Below, piece after piece: positions 1 through 29,833 of a stretch of DNA of 64,000 bases (its first letter is position 1; every line of letters starts with the position of its first letter). The position numbers were made by a program, and so were the translations under genes. The notes under the pieces were generated by a model, which saw only the letters and a list, made by a program, of their open reading frames with translations, was not told where the DNA came from and did no database searches. The DNA is from Auanema rhodensis (lineage: Eukaryota; Animalia; Nematoda): the NCBI GenBank assembly GCA_964057225.1, contig OZ059900.1, positions 5,704,001 to 5,768,000 on the forward strand, written 5' to 3'.

Positions 1-561
1 ACATTTAAAATATTAAGAAAATCAATAATTATTTAGAAAAAAACAATAAATATTCAAATATTCAAATTTTCGAAATGTCCAGAATATTGGCACTGGACCA
101 CATATTCCTAATTAACAATGTTTAAAAAATTAATTAATTAAACAAAGAGGAAAAAAATGTGGAAGACAGATGACAAACATCTCAATGCGGAGAAAATAAC
201 GGAAACATAACAGGATGACTGTAGCAGACAGTATATACCCATTTGTCTGCATATTTTACCATCTACAGTCGTAAAACAGACAATCTTGATAAAGCTTGAA
301 GAATCCCAGAAGGGTTTGTTCAAATACGAAATATTTTTTTTGAAATTTACAGAAAGGTTAGTTGTAAAATAAAGTACAGATAATCTTGGATGAAACCAAC
401 ATTACTACAAGACAATTGATATCAGTGATACAATAAGAGTTTCTTTATTATAACAAGAACAACAAGAAAACAAATATTAGCCTGAGGCCAAAACAAAATA
501 AAAAGTCTTGTAGACTTATGCAAACATAAAACGTGCAACAAAAAGTTTTCAACTGATTCCA

Positions 562-2369
562 TCAACAATCACTCTTCCAAACACGAATGGTCGTATAAGG
601 TTCAAGTCCGCTGGTAACAATCGAATTTTCAGTTGGATGACAATCCATGGCTCCAATAACTTCTGAACAATAAACTATGCTCTTACAATCGTAATAATCA
701 CAAGCCAACCAGACATTCCTGTGATAGCTTGTACCACATTTTGGCTTTCCATATCCCAAATCAAGAGTTTCTTATCTTCAGATCCACACATTATAAACTG
801 AATGAATTCATGCAGCATGCAACAAAGCGTGCCTATTACCTGTCCTGATGTAAAAGAGAAGCAGCAGTCAAGTTTATATCCCTCGTTTTTATGTCCCTTG
901 TAGAGTTTCAAACAATTTTCTTCTTGCCAATCCCATAATTTAATGAAACTAAATTTCATAAATAAAAAAGCAAACATCCAATAGAAAACTTTACCCGTCA
1001 AACGTAGCTGACAAGATATATTTTCCATTAGGAGAGAATCTTGCAAAAGACACAGGATATGAATTACCGTCTGCAGTCATTAGGTAAGATAGATAAAAAA
1101 TTACATAAACAACAATCCTGAGATCCGTCTGCAATTATCGACTTTACACATAAGCGAGTATTGGAATTCCAAATACGGATCAATCCATCGTAAGCAGCAG
1201 TGCAGAAGTGAGTTCCATCACTGCAAATCAAAACAGTTTCACAAGCAACAAAACTAAAACTCACAAATTGAAATAAACAGCTGATACAAAACCACAATGA
1301 GCATCTAACTGATGGAGACACAGCCCTGTGTTAACACTCCAAACACGTACAGTACCATCAATTGAGCCTGATATAACAAGCTTGCAAACAAAAGATTATG
1401 TCTAAAACAGCCAAACCTGATAAAGCTAACTTTGACTGCGGACACAAACTACAGCACAAAGCTTTCTGTTCATGTCCTTCAAAAACGCGAATACACTTGC
1501 CGGACAATTGCTCCCAGAGCTTAAAAACGAAAAATTACAAGAATTTTCAATGTTAAATACCCTGCAAGTGCAATCGTCTGATGCTGAAAACAACAACTTA
1601 TCGTCCGAGCTCCACACAAGATCATTAACTCCTAATTTATGACCAGACATCTGGATAAAAATATTGTACCACCATATATATGCTTACGAACCGTTTTCAT
1701 AACTGCGCCGTTTATATAATTCCAAATTTTAATCATGCTATCGGAGGAAGCGGACGCAATGAAACTACCACAGTATGAGAACTTAACCGCATTTACTGCT
1801 CTAGTGTGGCCATTCAAAGCAATGAATTCAACATAGTTCGGGCTTTTCTTTTTTTCGACCTAGAACGAATGAAAACTGTTTTTCGTTCTAATGATAACAC
1901 ATTTCCTAACCTCTAAGTTATCATTCCTAGAATTCGCAGTTCTTTCCATCATCTCTTCATACACTTCATTACATTCCATTTCTTCAGGTATAATGATGAA
2001 TTCCTCCATAATATCATCGTCATCCTGTAATAAACAGTTTAAATTTGCAATTTCGAGAAAGAAACCTCATCGATAAGGTGAGATTCTTCTGATTTTGTGC
2101 AAGATAGCAAATTCGCTGTATTACTTTCACTCTTACTGTTGTTCTGAGAACTAAAATCTGAATGGAAGCCAGATTCCTTGTTTTCAGCATCAGCAGCATT
2201 CAAATTCTGAACAGCTTACGACATAAGATAAAACATCTAAAGTAAAATAGTCTTACTGAGCTTTCAGAACAGTTCAGATTAATTTTCTTTGCTGCCACAG
2301 AAGAAAGATGTGGTGCATTTGAATCCTAAATCATCAAACGGTGAAAATATCTGAATAAGTTTATACCAT
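562..2369 (-). CDS. wdr-5: WDR5-like WD40 protein, divergent paralog with acidic N-terminal extension (copy A, multi-exon)
   Basis: Spliced translation gives LNGHTRAVNAVKFS, SGHKLGVNDLVWSSD, SASDD, LSGKCIRVFEGH, YDGLIRIW, FSPNGKYIL, YKGHKNE, GSEDKKLLIWD, CHPTENSI and ends WKSDC*, colinear with WDR5 including its C-terminus. ATG at 2369; the introns checked are GT-AG, ~40-55 nt. Confidence 0.9.
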
Positions 2370-3325
2370 TTTAAAAAACGTTTGTGATGTTAATTTGAGT
2401 GAGAAATGTAAACCTGAAAAGAAAAAAAAATAGGTTTGGAATAATGAAAATAAAATTATTTCCCATAAGCTAATTGTATAGAATAGTTTGCAAGTTATTT
2501 AAGTATTCACAACATATAAAACGTTTACCTATCCAAACAGAATAAACTAAACAGCAACATGTCATAGAAATACCAAGTATTACATAAATGAATATTAGGA
2601 TGTACAATCATATCCGATCCTACACGCTGAGAAAACCCAATGAAACCAACAATATCATTACTTCCGCCATGTTACAACAATCAGTTATCTCATAAACAAA
2701 ATAAAATTATGTTCTCCTCAAAAGAAAATTGGAAAACAAAGTATACTAACCTATAGCTATGATGACATTTAAAATATTAAGAAAATCAATAATTATTTAG
2801 AAAAAAACAATAAATATTCAAATATTCAAATTTTCGAAATGTACAGAATATTGGCACTGGACCACATATTCCTAATTAACAATGTTTAAAAAATTAATTA
2901 ATTAAACAAAGAGGAAAAAAATGTGGAAGACAGATGACAAACATCTCAATGCGGAGAAAATAACGGAAACATAACAGGATGACTGTAGCAGACAGTATAT
3001 ACCCATTTGTCTGCATATTTTACCATCTACAGTCGTAAAAGAGACAATCTTGATAAAGCTTGAAGAATCCCAGAAGGGTTTGTTCAAATACGAAATATTT
3101 TTTTTGAAATTTACAGAAAGGTTAGTTGTAAAATAAAGTACAGATAATCTTGGATGAAACCAACATTACTACAAGACAATTGATATCAGTGATACAATAA
3201 GAGTTTCTTTATTATAACAAGAACAACAAGAAAACAAATATTAGCCTGAGGCCAAAACAAAATAAAAAGTCTTGTAGACTTATGCAAACATAAAACGTGC
3301 AACAAAAAGTTTTCAACTGATTCCA

Positions 3326-5133
3326 TCAACAATCACTCTTCCAAACACGAATGGTCGTATAAGGTTCAAGTCCGCTGGTAACAATCGAATTTTCAGTTGG
3401 ATGACAATCCATGGCTCCAATAACTTCTGAACAATAAACTATGCTCTTACAATCGTAATAATCACAAGCCAACCAGACATTCCTGTGATAGCTTGTACCA
3501 CATTTTGGCTTTCCATATCCCAAATCAAGAGTTTCTTATCTTCAGATCCACACATTATAAACTGAATGAATTCATGCAGCATGCAACAAAGCGTGCCTAT
3601 TACCTGTCCTGATGTAAAAGAGAAGCAGCAGTCAAGTTTATATCCCTCGTTTTTATGTCCCTTGTAGAGTTTCAAACAATTTTCTTCTTGCCAATCCCAT
3701 AATTTAATGAAACTAAATTTCATAAATAAAAAAGCAAACATCCAATAGAAAACTTTACCCGTCAAACGTAGCTGACAAGATATATTTTCCATTAGGAGAG
3801 AATCTTGCAAAAGACACAGGATATGAATTACCGTCTGCAGTCATTAGGTAAGATAGATAAAAAATTACATAAACAACAATCCTGAGATCCGTCTGCAATT
3901 ATCGACTTTACACATAAGCGAGTATTGGAATTCCAAATACGGATCAATCCATCGTAAGCAGCAGTGCAGAAGTGAGTTCCATCACTGCAAATCAAAACAG
4001 TTTCACAAGCAACAAAACTAAAACTCACAAATTGAAATAAACAGCTGATACAAAACCACAATGAGCATCTAACTGATGGAGACACAGCCCTGTGTTAACA
4101 CTCCAAACACGTACAGTACCATCAATTGAGCCTGATATAACAAGCTTGCAAACAAAAGATTATGTCTAAAACAGCCAAACCTGATAAAGCTAACTTTGAC
4201 TGCGGACACAAACTACAGCACAAAGCTTTCTGTTCATGTCCTTCAAAAACGCGAATACACTTGCCGGACAATTGCTCCCAGAGCTTAAAAACGAAAAATT
4301 ACAAGAATTTTCAATGTTAAATACCCTGCAAGTGCAATCGTCTGATGCTGAAAACAACAACTTATCGTCCGAGCTCCACACAAGATCATTAACTCCTAAT
4401 TTATGACCAGACATCTGGATAAAAATATTGTACCACCATATATATGCTTACGAACCGTTTTCATAACTGCGCCGTTTATATAATTCCAAATTTTAATCAT
4501 GCTATCGGAGGAAGCGGACGCAATGAAACTACCACAGTATGAGAACTTAACCGCATTTACTGCTCTAGTGTGGCCATTCAAAGCAATGAATTCAACATAG
4601 TTCGGGCTTTTCTTTTTTTCGACCTAGAACGAATGAAAACTGTTTTTCGTTTTAATGATAACACATTTCCTAACCTCTAAGTTATCATTCCTAGAATTCG
4701 CAGTTCTTTCCATCATCTCTTCATACACTTCATTACATTCCATTTCTTCAGGTATAATGATGAATTCCTCCATAATATCATCGTCATCCTGTAATAAACA
4801 GTTTAAATTTGCAATTTCGAGAAAGAAACCTCATCGATAAGGTGAGATTCTTCTGATTTTGTGCAAGATAGCAAATTCGCTGTATTACTTTCACTCTTAC
4901 TGTTGTTCTGAGAACTAAAATCTGAATGGAAGCCAGATTCCTTGTTTTCAGCATCAGCAGCATTCAAATTCTGAACAGCTTACGACATAAGATAAAACAT
5001 CTAAAGTAAAATAGTCTTACTGAGCTTTCAGAACAGTTCAGATTAATTTTCTTTGCTGCCACAGAAGAAAGATGTGGTGCATTTGAATCCTAAATCATCA
5101 AACGGTGAAAATATCTGAATAAGTTTATACCAT
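3326..5133 (-). CDS. wdr-5: WDR5-like WD40 protein (copy B)
   Basis: Same exons as copy A shifted by 2764; ORF-track translations overlapping the gene are identical. Confidence 0.9.
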
Positions 5134-6113
5134 TTTAAAAAACGTTTGTGATGTTAATTTGAGTGAGAAATGTAAACCTGAAAAGAAAAAAAATAGGTTT
5201 GGAATAATGAAAATAAAATTATTTCCCATAAGCTAATTGTATAGAATAGTTTGCAAGTTATTTAAGTATTCACAACATATAAAACGTTTACCTATCCAAA
5301 CAGAATAAACTAAACAGCAACATGTCATAGAAATACCAAGTATTACATAAATGAATATTAGGATGTACAATCATATCCGATCCTACACGCTGAGAAAACC
5401 CAATGAAACCAACAATATCATTACTTCCGCCATGTTACAACAATCAGTTATCTCATAAACAAAATAAAATTATGTTCTCCTCAAAAGAAAATTGGAAAAC
5501 AAAGTATACTAACCTATAGCTATGATGACATTTAAAATATTAAGAAAATCAATAATTATTTAGAAAAAAACAATAAATATTCAAATATTCAAATTTTCGA
5601 AATGTCCAGAATATTGGCACTGGACCACATATTCCTAATTAACAATGTTTAAAAAATTAATTAATTAAACAAAGAGGAAAAAAATGTGGAAGACAGATGA
5701 CAAACATCTCAATGCGGAGAAAATAACGGAAACATAACAGGATGACTGTAGCAGACAGTATATACCCATTTGTCTGCAGCAGCAGATAAAAAAAATATTG
5801 TAATGAATTTATTTTTTGAAATTTTGAAATTTTGTTTGTTTTGCATTAGGTCAGACTTTCAGTTTGGTGCATAATGTAATATCTAATTTAATTTTTTTCC
5901 ATAATTTTATATAATTTGAATAGATAAAGATAATAGAAAAATAAACATAGCCATCGTTAATTTTGCAATCGCGTATTACGTCCTTTTGTTTTTTGTCATT
6001 CTTACAGTTTTTCTTTTATTCAGATGTTGGAACAAATACATTAAAAAAATGTTTATTGGTCGACTATGTAGCGTTAAAAATGCCATTATATGATTTCTTT
6101 TTTTAATAAAAGT

Positions 6114-7973
6114 TTAGGCTTGAACGGGCTCAGCTGCAGTCTCAGAGTCAGGGACAACCTGTCAAAATTAATATTAATGCATTAAGGAATTTTTAAAACT
6201 ATTACTTCGGCTACGGGCTGATCTGGTTCATCCTCAAACTCTTTTTCAGGCACAGACAGAGGGACTGGATCGACAGGTGGACGAGCAGCATCTCCTTCAG
6301 CTTTAACTTGTTCGATGTACTTTGGAGGCTCAAGATTTTTTCTAATAATGTTTCTTTTTTCTGTATATACATTGTTTTGAAACGTTTACCTGAGTTGCTC
6401 AAGTTCTTCGTTTTCTTTGCGTCCCCACTCAGCTGGTGGGCGAGCTGTTCCACGAACAAGAGTGTAAGGCTTCTTTGTTATAGGGTTTTCAAACAAGTAA
6501 CGACGATCTCCGTAAGATCTGGTAGCCAAAAATTGCTTATTTTTCAAATGATCATAGTTACCTGCGATCAGTTTGTCTGTCAAATTTAGAAGATACGGTT
6601 ATCTTTGGTGGGTGGAGTGAACGAGCAGCTTCTTCGGGATCCAATCCCTTCTTCAAAGCCTTGTTACGAGCAACTTGGCGCTGACGCTCATGAAGCTCTT
6701 TTACCTCAAATGATACTACATATCAATAGTACTCATACAAGCTTACGTCATATTCTTGGCGTTCATGTCTCTTCTCGAGATCGTATTTTTCAGCTTCAAG
6801 CTTGAGAATACGATCATAAAGATTCTTAATCCTTTCTTTAAGATCGTTTGGCAAAAGTCCAGAAATATCTGTCGATCTGCAAACGGCATTCAAGAATGCC
6901 TTCTTGGCTTCAGCAGCTTGTTCAGGAGACATTCCACCAGCAGTTTTGGTCTGAAAATAAATTTGAATATATATTTTTGTCTTCATATGTAACACCTGAG
7001 CCAAATTTCCAAACTGAGAGGCTTGGTCTCCCTTGCTGTTGATAGTGAAATTTTTTCCACCATCAGCAGTAGCAGCAGCAGCAGCAAAGGATCCAGCCAT
7101 CATTTGTTGGCGTCTAGCCTTCTCCTCGTTTTTACGTAGTTTTTCAGCATCAGCACGGTTTTTGCGATCTTCCTGAAATCTTATGAAAATAAAATTTAAT
7201 ACAAAAGAAAGAGATGGTGGCTGGTTTTTGACCATCTGATATCATTTAAAAGATTTGAATTTTCTAATGTACCTCGTCTTTACGACGTCTTTCTTCGTCT
7301 TGACGTCTGCGTTCAGCAAATTCGCGTTCTTCTTGTTCTCTTTCAGCTCTTGAATATCAAATAGCTAATTATAAAAATCATAAAACATACCTTCTCTTTT
7401 CTTGCTTAACTTTGAGTTCACGGAGTTCGTCTTCGATTTTTTGACGCTCAAGAACACGACGTTGTTCGTAATCAAGCATTTTAGCTGCTTCTTCTTCTTC
7501 GTGACGTTTCTTAGCTGCCTGCAATTTACTTTTGTTATCAATTTTTAAAATTTTTTTTTACAAGCATAGCAGCTTCAGCTTCCGTCATTTCTGCGGGAGG
7601 CTTCTCATCTTGAACTGGAGGTGGTCTGGGCTTTGGTCTATAAAGTTCAAATCATCATAACGATTCTTAATATATTGTTGTACTTCTCTTCTTCGACTGG
7701 AGCTGGTTCAGCTTCAGCAGCTTCAGAAACTTCTTCTTCTTCCTCTCTTAAAAAATGTATAAATGTTATCAAAATTGTAAAAGGAGTTCAAACTTGTCTT
7801 CTTCTTCAACTGCGTCAGCAGCCTCAGACTCTTCAACCTCTTCAATCTCTTCTTCCTCACCAGAACTGAAAAAGCAGAATATTTTGTTGTTGATAAAGAT
7901 ATAATGATTAGAAAATATGATTAAAAATGAAGCATTGGATTTAGACTTACAGTACTTCCTCTTCGTCAGACAT
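6114..7973 (-). CDS. Troponin T (mup-2/tnt-2 type), multi-exon
   Basis: MSDEEE acidic start; [28 protein letters not shown]; [32 protein letters not shown]; [24 protein letters not shown]; [19 protein letters not shown] are nematode troponin T motifs. Paralog identity not resolved. Confidence 0.93.
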
Positions 7974-29320: not shown

Positions 29321-29833
29321 TTAATCTTCACACCAAGCGTTTTCCTTGCGGATCTGTTCTTCTTCCTCAGGAGTAAAATCGTTTATTATATTGAAAGTAC
29401 GACGAATTTCTTCAGGGCTTTTGCCCTTGATGAGATTAGCAACAGATTTGCATGTTACATCCAAAAGTCCGGGAATATCCAAGTAGTTAGCAGCCAAGAT
29501 AATCTCAAACAGTGTAGCTTGGTCAACCTTCAGAAATTCGACATCCCATGATGGAATATCATCCAATCGCTTTTCACGTGAATCCTTATCTTCTTCTGGC
29601 TCATCATCTTTATGGTAAGAACACCATTGAATTACTTTCTTCAAAACAGCACCATTGACACATTGAACTGGCACGGGCTCCATCTCAGTCAAATCGGTAG
29701 CGTCAAGACCCAAATCGATAATCATAGTATTCAAAGTGTTAGAAAGGCGAACAACATCGCGATCTACTTCAAAAACCTCTTGATCAGAAGAGCGAAGTCT
29801 GATTTTAGGAGATGAGTTAGCAACAGCAGCCAT
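29321..29833 (-). CDS. skr-1: SKP1-family SCF adaptor, single exon, 170 aa
   Basis: [79 protein letters not shown]. Likely ATG at 29833 just after a tttctag acceptor-like site; the ORF track's upstream extension looks non-coding. Exact skr paralog uncertain. Confidence 0.93.

What the first reader, a model, noticed from the sequence alone, without database searches (positions are those of the whole stretch)
1..5778. Very recent tandem amplification of a whole chromatin-adaptor gene
Each 2.76-kb unit holds one complete WDR5-like gene plus ~645 bp upstream. I saw only three substitutions and one 1-nt indel between copies, none in WD40 coding exons, so the array is young or homogenised. It runs off the left edge, so copy number is unknown. 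Canonical WDR5 is usually a slow-evolving low-copy gene; an ampliconic divergent copy suggests (inference) dosage selection or a germline/conflict role.
Basis: partly seen in the sequence, partly recalled or inferred. Interest (0 to 1): 0.75.

Follow-up and report, generated by a model that had tools for sequence, protein, structure and literature searches.

The report
Recent tandem array of WDR5-like gene
A roundworm (almost certainly Auanema rhodense) carries five intact, near-identical head-to-tail copies, plus one broken copy, of a divergent relative of the chromatin adaptor WDR5; the amplification is real and recent, but it is an ordinary kind of gene duplication and its purpose is untested.

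Summary
Window 1-5778 is the right-hand end of a head-to-tail array with a 2,764-bp unit. With 80 kb of left flank fetched, the array covers C8:5,689,304-5,709,778. It has five intact units that are 99.78-100% identical to the reference unit. A sixth, leftmost unit is broken by a 5.1-kb palindrome carrying 5S rRNA and U2 genes.

Each unit holds one minus-strand gene of 13 exons with 12 GT-AG introns, giving 426 codons. About 825 bp separates consecutive genes. All five copies are intact; the only coding differences are one synonymous change and one N-to-I change in the N-terminal tail.

The gene is a WDR5-type propeller, about 52% identical to the canonical WDR5 on contig C7. It shares all eight propeller intron positions with that gene. 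Its arginine (WIN) pocket is rebuilt: F133L, F263D, C261K.

Mean pairwise difference between the five intact copies is 0.145%, and variants are shared in a mosaic. The array is therefore evolutionarily recent and has undergone exchange between copies.

The genome matches the 180.9-Mb A. rhodense germline assembly. The array lies about 189 kb on the gene-rich, probably retained side of a putative DNA-elimination site.

Dosage selection or a conflict role remains untested. The scan had already noted this same array in overlapping windows, not on other DNA. Interest is modest.

The parts
1..251 (-). Last 251 bp (unit positions 2514-2764) of copy c3. This is the distal upstream region of the c3 gene, whose body lies left of the window.
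   Evidence: 100% identical to 5528-5778. The left flank shows that the full unit c3 is C8:5,701,489-5,704,251.
252..3015 (-). Complete repeat unit c4 (2,764 bp), used as the reference unit.
3016..5778 (-). Complete repeat unit c5 (2,763 bp), the rightmost unit. The array ends at 5778.
   Evidence: The right flank has no significant similarity to the start of the unit.
562..2369 (-). WDR5-like gene, copy c4. It has 13 exons: 2369-2367, 2325-2257, 2206-2066, 2024-1911, 1859-1692, 1650-1561, 1519-1417, 1367-1265, 1220-1105, 1070-995, 948-840, 797-710 and 662-562. The 12 GT-AG introns are 34-51 bp long. The model gives 426 codons.
   Evidence: Phase and stop check by coordinates. Exons 5-13 are colinear with Pfam PF25175 positions 5-296. 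WDR5 is the best full-length, single-stretch match in the PDB.
3326..5133 (-). WDR5-like gene, copy c5. It has the same model shifted by +2764 and encodes the same protein as c4.
   Evidence: No variant between c4 and c5 falls in an exon.
1692..1859 (-). Exon 5, covering blade 7/1 of the propeller. It maps to human WDR5 residues 32-82 and carries S49N and A65S.
   Evidence: query 6-56 aligns to 2xl2_A 32-82 without gaps.
1418..1519 (-). Exon 7 (whole codons). It maps to WDR5 residues 113-145 and carries Y131K and F133L, so one aromatic wall of the WIN pocket is lost.
   Evidence: query 1-33 aligns to 2xl2_A 113-145 without gaps.
840..947 (-). Exon 11 (whole codons). It maps to WDR5 residues 238-271. 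C261K and F263D remove the second WIN wall. L240, K250 and F266 are kept, and V268 becomes F.
   Evidence: from the printed alignment and the range 2-35 to 238-271.
1911..2325 (-). Exons 2-4 with introns 2-3. They encode an acidic, serine-rich N-terminal tail of about 108 residues with no Pfam match. The start codon (a one-codon exon 1 at 2369-2367) is the least certain part of the model.
   Evidence: The frames stay open for 58 and 68 codons in 31% G+C DNA.
444..449 (-). AATAAA polyadenylation-type signal, about 115 nt after the stop codon.
   Evidence: Read from the sequence. Not tested.
252..390 (.). 139-bp segment present at every internal unit junction but absent from the left end of the array, which starts at unit position 140. 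It is either filler DNA from the first duplication junction or original flank later lost at the edge.
   Evidence: It is found only five times in the genome, all in the array.

Best explanation
This is a genuine and evolutionarily recent tandem amplification. It lies in what is almost certainly the Auanema rhodense germline genome.

One 2.76-kb segment was amplified to six head-to-tail copies. The segment contains a complete, intron-rich, divergent WDR5 paralogue, 646 bp of its upstream DNA and about 310 bp of downstream DNA. Five copies remain intact. The leftmost copy was later destroyed by a 5.1-kb palindromic insertion that also deleted 1,056 bp.

The parent gene is an old, DNA-level duplicate of the canonical WDR5 gene, which sits on another contig. 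It shares all eight propeller intron positions with that gene and is about 52% identical at the protein level.

The first duplication was probably non-homologous, because the flanks share no repeat and the junction carries a 139-bp array-specific segment. Further copies then arose by unequal exchange between misaligned units, which also explains the mosaic sharing of variants.

The immediate consequence (inferred) is roughly five-fold gene dosage of one and the same protein. That protein is a seven-bladed WDR5-type propeller. Its central arginine-binding pocket has lost key residues, while most of the second (WBM) docking surface is kept. It probably works outside the SET1/MLL H3K4-methylation complex, as C. 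elegans WDR-5.2 and WDR-5.3 appear to do.

Whether the extra copies were selected or merely tolerated is not resolved.
For: Array structure: searches show five full units at 99.78-100% identity, plus two fragments of a sixth.

Uniqueness: searches found no other copy in the assembly.

Intact genes: one search gives 12 GT-AG introns and 426 codons with no internal stop. Searches show only two coding variants among the five copies, one synonymous (GGG to GGA) and one N-to-I in the tail. There are no exon indels and all splice sites are kept.

Family: exons 5-13 are colinear with PF25175. Exons 5, 7 and 11 each align without gaps, as a single stretch, to WDR5 chains.

Old paralogy with shared introns.

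Recency: nine variable sites among the five copies give a mean of 4.0 substitutions per 2,764 bp, or 0.145%. With a C. elegans-like mutation rate of about 2e-9 per site per generation (general knowledge), this is on the order of 4e5 generations. That is far too old for a laboratory origin. It is also far too young for the array to be shared with Auanema sp. JU1783, whose Skp1 protein is only 91% identical.

Exchange between copies: site 58 against 2081 and site 58 against 1637 both fail the four-gamete test, and non-adjacent copies c1 and c3 share a two-substitution block.

Assembly quality: HiFi reads, an inbred line and 236x coverage.
Against: No read-level evidence was available, so the true copy number could be higher (collapse) or lower.

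No RNA evidence was available. Expression of any copy, the one-codon first exon and the N-terminal exons are all inferred.

The nine variable sites are too few to separate a young array from an older, homogenised one.

Two of nine variants lie in the coding sequence, against 4.2 expected. This is not significant (binomial P about 0.14), so purifying selection on the copies is not shown.

The array is 139 bp short of a whole number of units, which needs one extra event.

No sister-species locus could be fetched, so species-specificity is argued from divergence levels only.
Confidence: 0.7

Rival explanations
1. The array is not young. It is an older multi-copy locus kept nearly identical by continuing gene conversion and unequal crossing-over (concerted evolution), so the 0.15% difference measures the homogenisation rate rather than the age.
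For: Variants are shared in a mosaic that fails the four-gamete test. The broken edge copy, which can no longer pair in register across its whole length, is about 2.6 times more diverged: 6 private changes in 1,569 bp, or 0.38%. Five of these cluster within 212 bp.
Against: Even the excluded edge copy differs by only 0.38%, so the whole array including c0 is recent on any clock. The nine sites can also be explained by a few multi-unit duplications. No outgroup was available.
Confidence: 0.2
2. The amplification is a neutral or slightly deleterious copy-number variant that drifted to fixation in the inbred APS4 line or its wild ancestor. The extra copies have no adaptive role and may be silenced.
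For: Tandem amplifications of whole genes and domains seem common in this genome: six GIT2 copies in the preprint and several unchecked scan notes. There is no significant deficit of coding changes among the copies. One copy has already been destroyed without being replaced.
Against: All five remaining copies keep an intact 426-codon frame and every splice site, and four encode the identical protein. At this low divergence, however, that is also expected by chance.
Confidence: 0.35
3. The array is an assembly artefact: uncollapsed haplotypes or a mis-assembled repeat of a single-copy or two-copy gene.
For: Near-identical 2.8-kb repeats are hard to assemble, and no reads could be inspected. The A8/A9 homopolymer difference could be a sequencing error.
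Against: The units carry nine distinct variant sites in a structured pattern. The array is anchored on the left by a unique palindrome insertion within a sixth copy and on the right by unique DNA. The intact part is 13.8 kb, which I judge to be within the usual length of HiFi reads. The strain is inbred and coverage of gene-rich DNA was 236x. No alternative contig holds the locus.
Confidence: 0.05
4. The array is germline-restricted DNA removed from somatic cells by programmed DNA elimination. On this reading the amplification is tied to germline conflict or to the elimination process itself.
For: This species eliminates about 61% of its germline genome. The array lies only about 0.2 Mb from the end of a terminal satellite block. 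The broken copy has acquired 5S and U2 genes, which the preprint says occur as tandem arrays within germline-restricted DNA. Six tandem GIT2 copies are known to be eliminated.
Against: The 176-bp satellite ends at C8:5,495,842. Palindromes resembling the published break-site motif lie at 5,500,710 and 5,501,277. Every sample from 5.50 Mb to the window is non-repetitive. The preprint places break sites at exactly this kind of transition, and its text names no WD40 or WDR gene at all. So the array is most likely retained in the soma.
Confidence: 0.05

Closest known systems
C. elegans WDR-5.2 and WDR-5.3, the divergent nematode paralogues of WDR-5.1
   Same: They are nematode-lineage duplicates of WDR5 that coexist with a canonical copy. 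[quoted passage not shown] WDR-5.2 has a germline sex-determination role that acts redundantly with WDR-5.1.
   Different: Those papers do not report the C. elegans genes as tandem arrays. Orthology to the gene described here could not be tested, because their sequences could not be fetched under the rules in force. The gene here is about 52% identical to its own canonical copy and has lost both aromatic walls of the WIN pocket. I do not know the state of that pocket in WDR-5.2 or WDR-5.3.
Canonical WDR5 (human WDR5, Drosophila Wds, and this genome's copy on C7:8,666,088-8,667,365)
   Same: It is a seven-bladed propeller that aligns without gaps to human residues 32-334, apart from one 7-residue loop insertion, and it ends in the same WKSDC motif. 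It has the same eight propeller intron positions as the C7 copy. D92, D107, S175, Y191, S218, Y260, N225, Y228, L240 and F266 are kept.
   Different: The changed residues are S49N, A65S, S91N, Y131K, F133L, F149I, C261K, F263D and I305G in or near the WIN pocket, and V268F and Q289E at the WBM site. There is an added acidic N-terminal tail of about 108 residues. There are five intact copies rather than one.
Other recent tandem gene amplifications in Auanema rhodense, for example the six tandem GIT2 copies
   Same: These are whole protein-coding genes multiplied head to tail in the same genome (preprint 10.64898/2026.08.27.747507).
   Different: The GIT2 copies lie in eliminated, germline-only DNA. 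The WDR5-like array lies in what looks like retained DNA, and the preprint's main text does not mention it.
Ampliconic conflict gene families, such as sex-linked, testis-expressed multicopy genes in mammals and flies
   Same: They have high copy identity and a tandem or clustered arrangement, and they involve a paralogue of a conserved housekeeping or chromatin gene.
   Different: None of the defining features is shown here: sex-chromosome linkage, gamete-specific expression, or co-amplified antagonists. The contig has the layout the preprint describes for autosomes (terminal satellite, gene-rich region, central satellite).

Membership tests
WDR5 family (Pfam PF25175, WDR5 beta-propeller) | A seven-bladed WD40 propeller colinear with WDR5 over its whole length. 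| tested here: met
   Exons 5-13 match PF25175 positions 5-47, 48-76, 78-111, 113-145, 147-179, 179-200, 203-236, 238-264 and 271-296, in that order. Exons 5, 7 and 11 align without gaps to 2xl2_A residues 32-82, 113-145 and 238-271.
WDR5 family (Pfam PF25175, WDR5 beta-propeller) | A whole-domain score above Pfam's curated cut-off of 250 bits. | tested here: inconclusive
   Only exon-by-exon scores were allowed. Their plain sum is about 229 bits. The joined protein was not scored.
WDR5 family, functional sense (SET1/MLL-COMPASS adaptor) | A WIN arginine pocket with the aromatic sandwich F133/F263 and lining residues S91 and C261. The roles of these residues are taken from general knowledge of WDR5 structures. 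| tested here: not met
   F133L and Y131K. C261K and F263D. S49N and A65S. S91N follows from contiguity with exon 5 and the Pfam register.
WDR5 family, functional sense (SET1/MLL-COMPASS adaptor) | The WBM surface that binds RbBP5, MYC and KANSL2 (N225, Y228, L240, F266, V268, Q289). The roles of these residues are taken from general knowledge. | tested here: inconclusive
   L240, K250 and F266 are kept and V268 becomes F. N225 and Y228 are kept and Q289 becomes E, by Pfam-register arithmetic. Binding itself cannot be tested here.
Recent tandem (segmental) gene amplification | At least three head-to-tail copies of one unit at very high identity, each holding a complete gene. | tested here: met
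   Five intact units at 99.78-100% identity plus one broken unit. The 426-codon model is intact in all five.
Recent tandem (segmental) gene amplification | Real in the organism rather than an assembly product, shown by spanning reads and proportional depth. | not testable with these tools
   No reads were available. Indirect support comes from structured variants, unique anchors, and a HiFi assembly of an inbred line.
Ampliconic meiotic-conflict gene family | Sex-chromosome linkage, gamete-limited expression, and copy-number arms race with an antagonist. | not tested
   No expression or population data were available. The layout of contig C8 looks autosomal, but this is weak evidence.
Germline-restricted (eliminated) gene of A. 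rhodense | A position on the eliminated side of a break-site (SFE) motif, with low somatic coverage. | tested here: not met
   The array is 189 kb on the non-satellite side of the SFE-like palindromes at C8:5,500,710 and 5,501,277. Coverage could not be tested.

The most novel reading that the evidence does not exclude
The amplified WDR5 paralogue, lacking a working WIN pocket, is an Auanema-specific, dosage-driven decoy. It keeps the RbBP5/WBM surface but cannot dock SET1/MLL or histone H3. Its copy number is pushed up by selection or conflict acting on germline chromatin, sex determination (compare the WDR-5.1/5.2 and TRA-1 link in C. elegans) or the unusual X-chromosome transmission of this three-sexed worm.
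Probability: 0.07. Interest if true: 0.75.

Novelty: new member of a known kind. Interest (0 to 1): 0.35.

Why it matters
WDR5 is normally a single, very conserved scaffold. This case shows a clear two-step history. First, an old duplicate drifted away from the canonical binding chemistry. Second, that duplicate was recently multiplied five- to six-fold.

If the copies are expressed, the worm makes a large amount of a WDR5-shaped protein that probably cannot bind the usual arginine-motif partners. That would be a natural experiment in separating the two docking surfaces of WDR5.

It also adds a datable example of unequal-exchange amplification, followed by loss of one copy through palindrome insertion, close to a programmed-DNA-elimination boundary.

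By itself, however, a young tandem gene array in a nematode is common biology, and no function is shown.

Tried and rejected
(1) I ran the search of protein representatives with exon 5, a 56-aa single WD repeat. The best 150 hits were all long multi-repeat WD40 proteins whose many repeats sum to huge scores. A single-repeat query was a poor choice.

(2) I ran the search for homologous proteins with the longest stop-free stretch of the gene (133 aa, window 678-1076, minus strand). There were no hits. The length filter excludes full-length relatives, so this blank says nothing.

The syntenic locus of Auanema sp. JU1783 could therefore not be fetched, and species-specificity could not be tested directly.

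All protein evidence is exon by exon by reference. No structure prediction was made for the same reason.

It was redone with coordinates only.

(6) A genome-wide pattern search for the break-site-like motif with three mismatches was barely above its control (61 matches against 27). Only the exact C8 pair and a few hits sharing the GGCT-N-AGCC core were informative.

(7) I tested whether the right flank is a decayed copy of the unit start. The local score was 19, against 16.5 +/- 2.9 for shuffled sequences, so it is not. The left and right flanks share no repeat that could have mediated the first duplication.

(8) I tested whether C5:12,961,502 is a third WDR5 paralogue. It is not: the exons are not colinear, so it is a different WD40 gene.

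(9) The Rfam scan found no RNA gene inside the units.

(10) The third word search was left unused, because no permitted query could reach full-length relatives.

Full report
OBSERVATION

A self-comparison of the window aligns 1-3015 with 2765-5778 at 99.83% identity (4 mismatches, 1 gap). It also aligns 1-251 with 5528-5778 at 100%. The period is 2764/2763 bp, the unit junctions fall at 251/252 and 3015/3016, and periodicity stops at 5778.

The two complete in-window units differ by three substitutions and one homopolymer indel. None of these is in a WD40 exon.

EXTENT OF THE ARRAY

The window is G000:C8:5,704,001-5,768,000 of a 180,911,798-bp assembly. I fetched the 80 kb to its left and compared the reference unit with it.

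- Three more complete units lie there: c1 at 5,695,962-5,698,724, c2 up to 5,701,488, and c3 up to 5,704,251.
- Before them is a partial unit (unit positions 1938-2764) at 5,695,137-5,695,961.
- 5.09 kb further left is a fragment of unit positions 140-881, at 5,689,304-5,690,045.
- The DNA between these two pieces is a palindrome. Its arms are at least 1,249 nt long and 99% complementary, and it carries mirror-image 5S rRNA and U2 genes. It replaced 1,056 bp of the unit.

The locus therefore holds five intact copies (c1-c5) and one broken copy (c0).

In the whole assembly, exon 5 is found five times and the last exon six times, always in this array. Apart from these, each has one distant match in a gene on C7, and exon 5 also has one weak match in an unrelated WD40 gene on C5. 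The 139 bp at the start of the unit occur only at the five internal positions. The array begins at unit position 140, so it is 139 bp short of six whole units. Neither flank resembles the unit or the other flank.

THE GENE

The gene lies on the minus strand. Reading the sequence and checking phases by coordinates gives 13 exons between 2369 and 562. There are 12 GT-AG introns of 34-51 bp and 426 codons with no internal stop.

Three parts of the model are less certain:
- The first exon is a single ATG codon, which is the weakest element.
- Exons 2-4 encode an acidic, serine-rich tail with no Pfam match. They stay open for 58 and 68 codons in 31% G+C DNA, which chance rarely allows.
- Intron 9 has three alternative in-frame GT donors, giving introns of 34, 40 or 43 nt.

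An AATAAA signal lies about 115 nt after the stop codon. Consecutive genes are about 825 bp apart, and 646 bp of upstream DNA lies inside the unit.

All protein evidence is exon by exon and by reference.

FAMILY

Exons 5-13 match Pfam PF25175 (WDR5 beta-propeller) colinearly from profile position 5 to 296. The exon scores sum to roughly 229 bits, against a whole-domain cut-off of 250. Membership by score is therefore borderline and could not be settled.

Against solved structures, exons 5, 7 and 11 each align as a single stretch, without gaps, to human WDR5 residues 32-82, 113-145 and 238-271. WDR5 and Drosophila Wds are the best such matches. The protein ends in the same five residues as human WDR5.

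From these alignments:
- S49N, A65S, Y131K, F133L, C261K, F263D and V268F are changed.
- L240, K250, Y260 and F266 are kept.

By register arithmetic on the Pfam alignments:
- S91N, F149I, Q289E and I305G are changed.
- D92, D107, S175, Y191, S218, N225, Y228 and L321 are kept.

Which residues line the WIN and WBM sites is general knowledge of WDR5 structures, not a result obtained here. On that basis, the arginine pocket has lost both aromatic walls, while the WBM surface is largely kept.

RELATION TO THE CANONICAL GENE

C7:8,666,088-8,667,365 holds a canonical WDR5 gene that retains Y131 and F133. Every propeller exon of the amplified gene aligns to its own block there, in order. The gaps between blocks have intron length, so all eight propeller intron positions are shared. 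Weighted protein identity is about 52%. The N-terminal exons have no counterpart.

The amplified gene is therefore an old duplicate made at the DNA level, not a retrocopy, and it has diverged strongly. A second candidate on C5 is a different WD40 gene.

VARIATION AND AGE

Aligning all copies gives 15 variable columns. Nine of them vary among the five intact copies, with a mean of 4.0 substitutions per pair, or 0.145%.

Two variants are in coding sequence:
- a synonymous GGG-to-GGA change in c1, in exon 8;
- an N-to-I change in the tail of c2, in exon 4.

No splice site is touched. Four copies therefore encode the same protein and the fifth differs by one tail residue. Two of nine variants in the 46% of the unit that is coding is not a significant deficit (P about 0.14).

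Sharing of variants is mosaic:
- c1 and c3 share a two-substitution block near the 5' end.
- c2 and c4 share the A9 homopolymer allele.
- Site 58 splits left copies from right copies.
- Site 58 against 2081, and site 58 against 1637, both fail the four-gamete test.

The broken copy has six private changes in 1,569 bp (0.38%), and five of them cluster within 212 bp.

With a C. elegans-like mutation rate of about 2e-9 per site per generation (general knowledge), the intact copies coalesce on the order of 4e5 generations ago and c0 about 1e6 generations ago. That is far older than any laboratory event. It is also far younger than the split from the nearest annotated relative.

ORGANISM AND CONTEXT

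A single-exon Skp1 gene at window 29324-29833 is 91% identical to a protein of Auanema sp. JU1783. Other nematodes reach at most 76%.

A 2026 preprint describes a PacBio HiFi plus Hi-C germline assembly of the inbred A. rhodense line APS4. That assembly spans 180.9 Mb, the same size as this genome. In that species about 61% of the germline genome is eliminated from the soma. The eliminated DNA is mainly terminal and central satellite blocks. Breaks occur at a 29-nt palindromic motif located at the satellite-to-gene-rich transitions.

Sampling C8 gave the following:
- Satellites cover 96-100% of every sample from 0.1 to 5.45 Mb, with repeat periods of 347/348, 695, 190, 173 and 176 bp.
- The last 176-bp array and a 41-bp array end at 5,495,842.
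- Every sample from 5.50 Mb to 11 Mb has almost no tandem repeat.
- A 281-bp satellite is present at 13 Mb.

Two identical palindrome-like sites with a GGCT-N-AGCC core lie at 5,500,710 and 5,501,277. Similar sites occur at 5.3-6.2 Mb on C5 and C4, and the C4 pair is about 0.6 kb beyond a related 176-bp satellite.

The array therefore lies about 189 kb on the gene-rich, most likely retained side of the putative break site. The preprint's text names no WD40 or WDR gene at all, including among the eliminated genes it describes.

MECHANISM (shown and inferred)

Shown:
- the structure of the array;
- the intactness of the five copies;
- the old paralogy with shared introns;
- the loss of WIN-pocket residues;
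- the low, mosaic divergence;
- the disruption of one copy.

Inferred:
- a non-homologous first duplication, because there is no flank repeat and the junction carries an array-specific 139-bp segment;
- later growth by unequal exchange;
- about five-fold dosage of one protein;
- a role outside SET1/MLL complexes. [quoted passage not shown]

Whether the copies were selected cannot be decided. Tandem amplifications seem frequent in this genome (and unchecked scan notes), so drift is a serious rival.

LIMITS

- No reads, RNA data or sister-species DNA could be examined.
- The one exhaustive protein search was wasted on a single-repeat query.
- The word search cannot reach full-length relatives from an exon.
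- The joined protein was not searched or folded.

VERDICT

It is a real, recent, probably lineage-specific tandem amplification of a divergent WDR5 paralogue. It is a new member of a known kind. The adaptive or conflict reading is untested, and its germline-restricted form is unlikely.

The same array was already noted by this scan in overlapping windows (s1-410091, s1-420955). It has not been noted on other DNA.

Noticed in passing
Left of the window: C8:5,690,046-5,695,136 (L003:6046-10000 and L006:1-1136): A 5,091-bp palindrome sits inside the broken array copy c0 and replaces 1,056 bp of the unit. Its arms are at least 1,249 nt long and 99% complementary. It carries mirror-image 5S rRNA and U2 snRNA genes.
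   Followed up: partly
C8:5,500,710 and 5,501,277 (L035/L053); also C4:6,191,295 and 6,191,719, and C5:5,339,158: These are 29-nt imperfect palindromes with a GGCT-N-AGCC core and AT-rich flanks, found just beyond the end of the terminal 176-bp satellite. They fit the published description of the A. rhodense break-site (SFE) motif. On C8 and C4 they occur as pairs 567 and 424 bp apart.
   Followed up: partly
C8:5,493,712-5,495,842 (L046/L047): An array with a 41-bp period and about 52 copies forms the last tandem repeat between the 176-bp satellite and unique DNA.
   Followed up: no
Left of the window: C8:5,695,137-5,695,961 (copy c0b), unit positions 2474-2685: Five private changes (four substitutions and one deletion) cluster within 212 bp of the upstream region of the broken copy, about 540 bp from the palindrome insertion. 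This could be a conversion tract or mutagenesis linked to break repair.
   Followed up: no
window 1071-1113 (minus strand), and the equivalent position in every copy: Intron 9 has three GT donors spaced 3 and 6 nt apart, all in the same phase. Any of them (introns of 34, 40 or 43 nt) keeps the reading frame. The encoded loop carries an insertion of 4-7 residues relative to human WDR5.
   Followed up: no
window 1911-2206 (minus strand), exons 3-4: The N-terminal tail contains a run of acidic residues mixed with I, L, F and M around the exon 3/4 junction. From memory it resembles the acidic-hydrophobic WBM-type motifs that bind the side of WDR5, so it might be an internal pseudo-ligand. This is speculation only and was not tested.
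   Followed up: no
window 6200-7235 (minus strand): A troponin-T-like gene, with a conserved C-terminal helix in the 170-aa open frame at 6723-7235, lies immediately to the right of the array. It would make a useful synteny anchor.
   Followed up: no
window 29324-29833 (minus strand): A single-exon Skp1 (skr-1-like) gene is 91% identical to a protein of Auanema sp. JU1783 and at most 76% identical to those of other nematodes. It was used here to place the organism.
   Followed up: yes
C7:8,666,088-8,667,365 (L016:364-1638, minus strand): This is the canonical WDR5 gene of the genome, with Y131 and F133 intact. Its introns lie at the same eight propeller positions as in the amplified paralogue.
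   Followed up: partly
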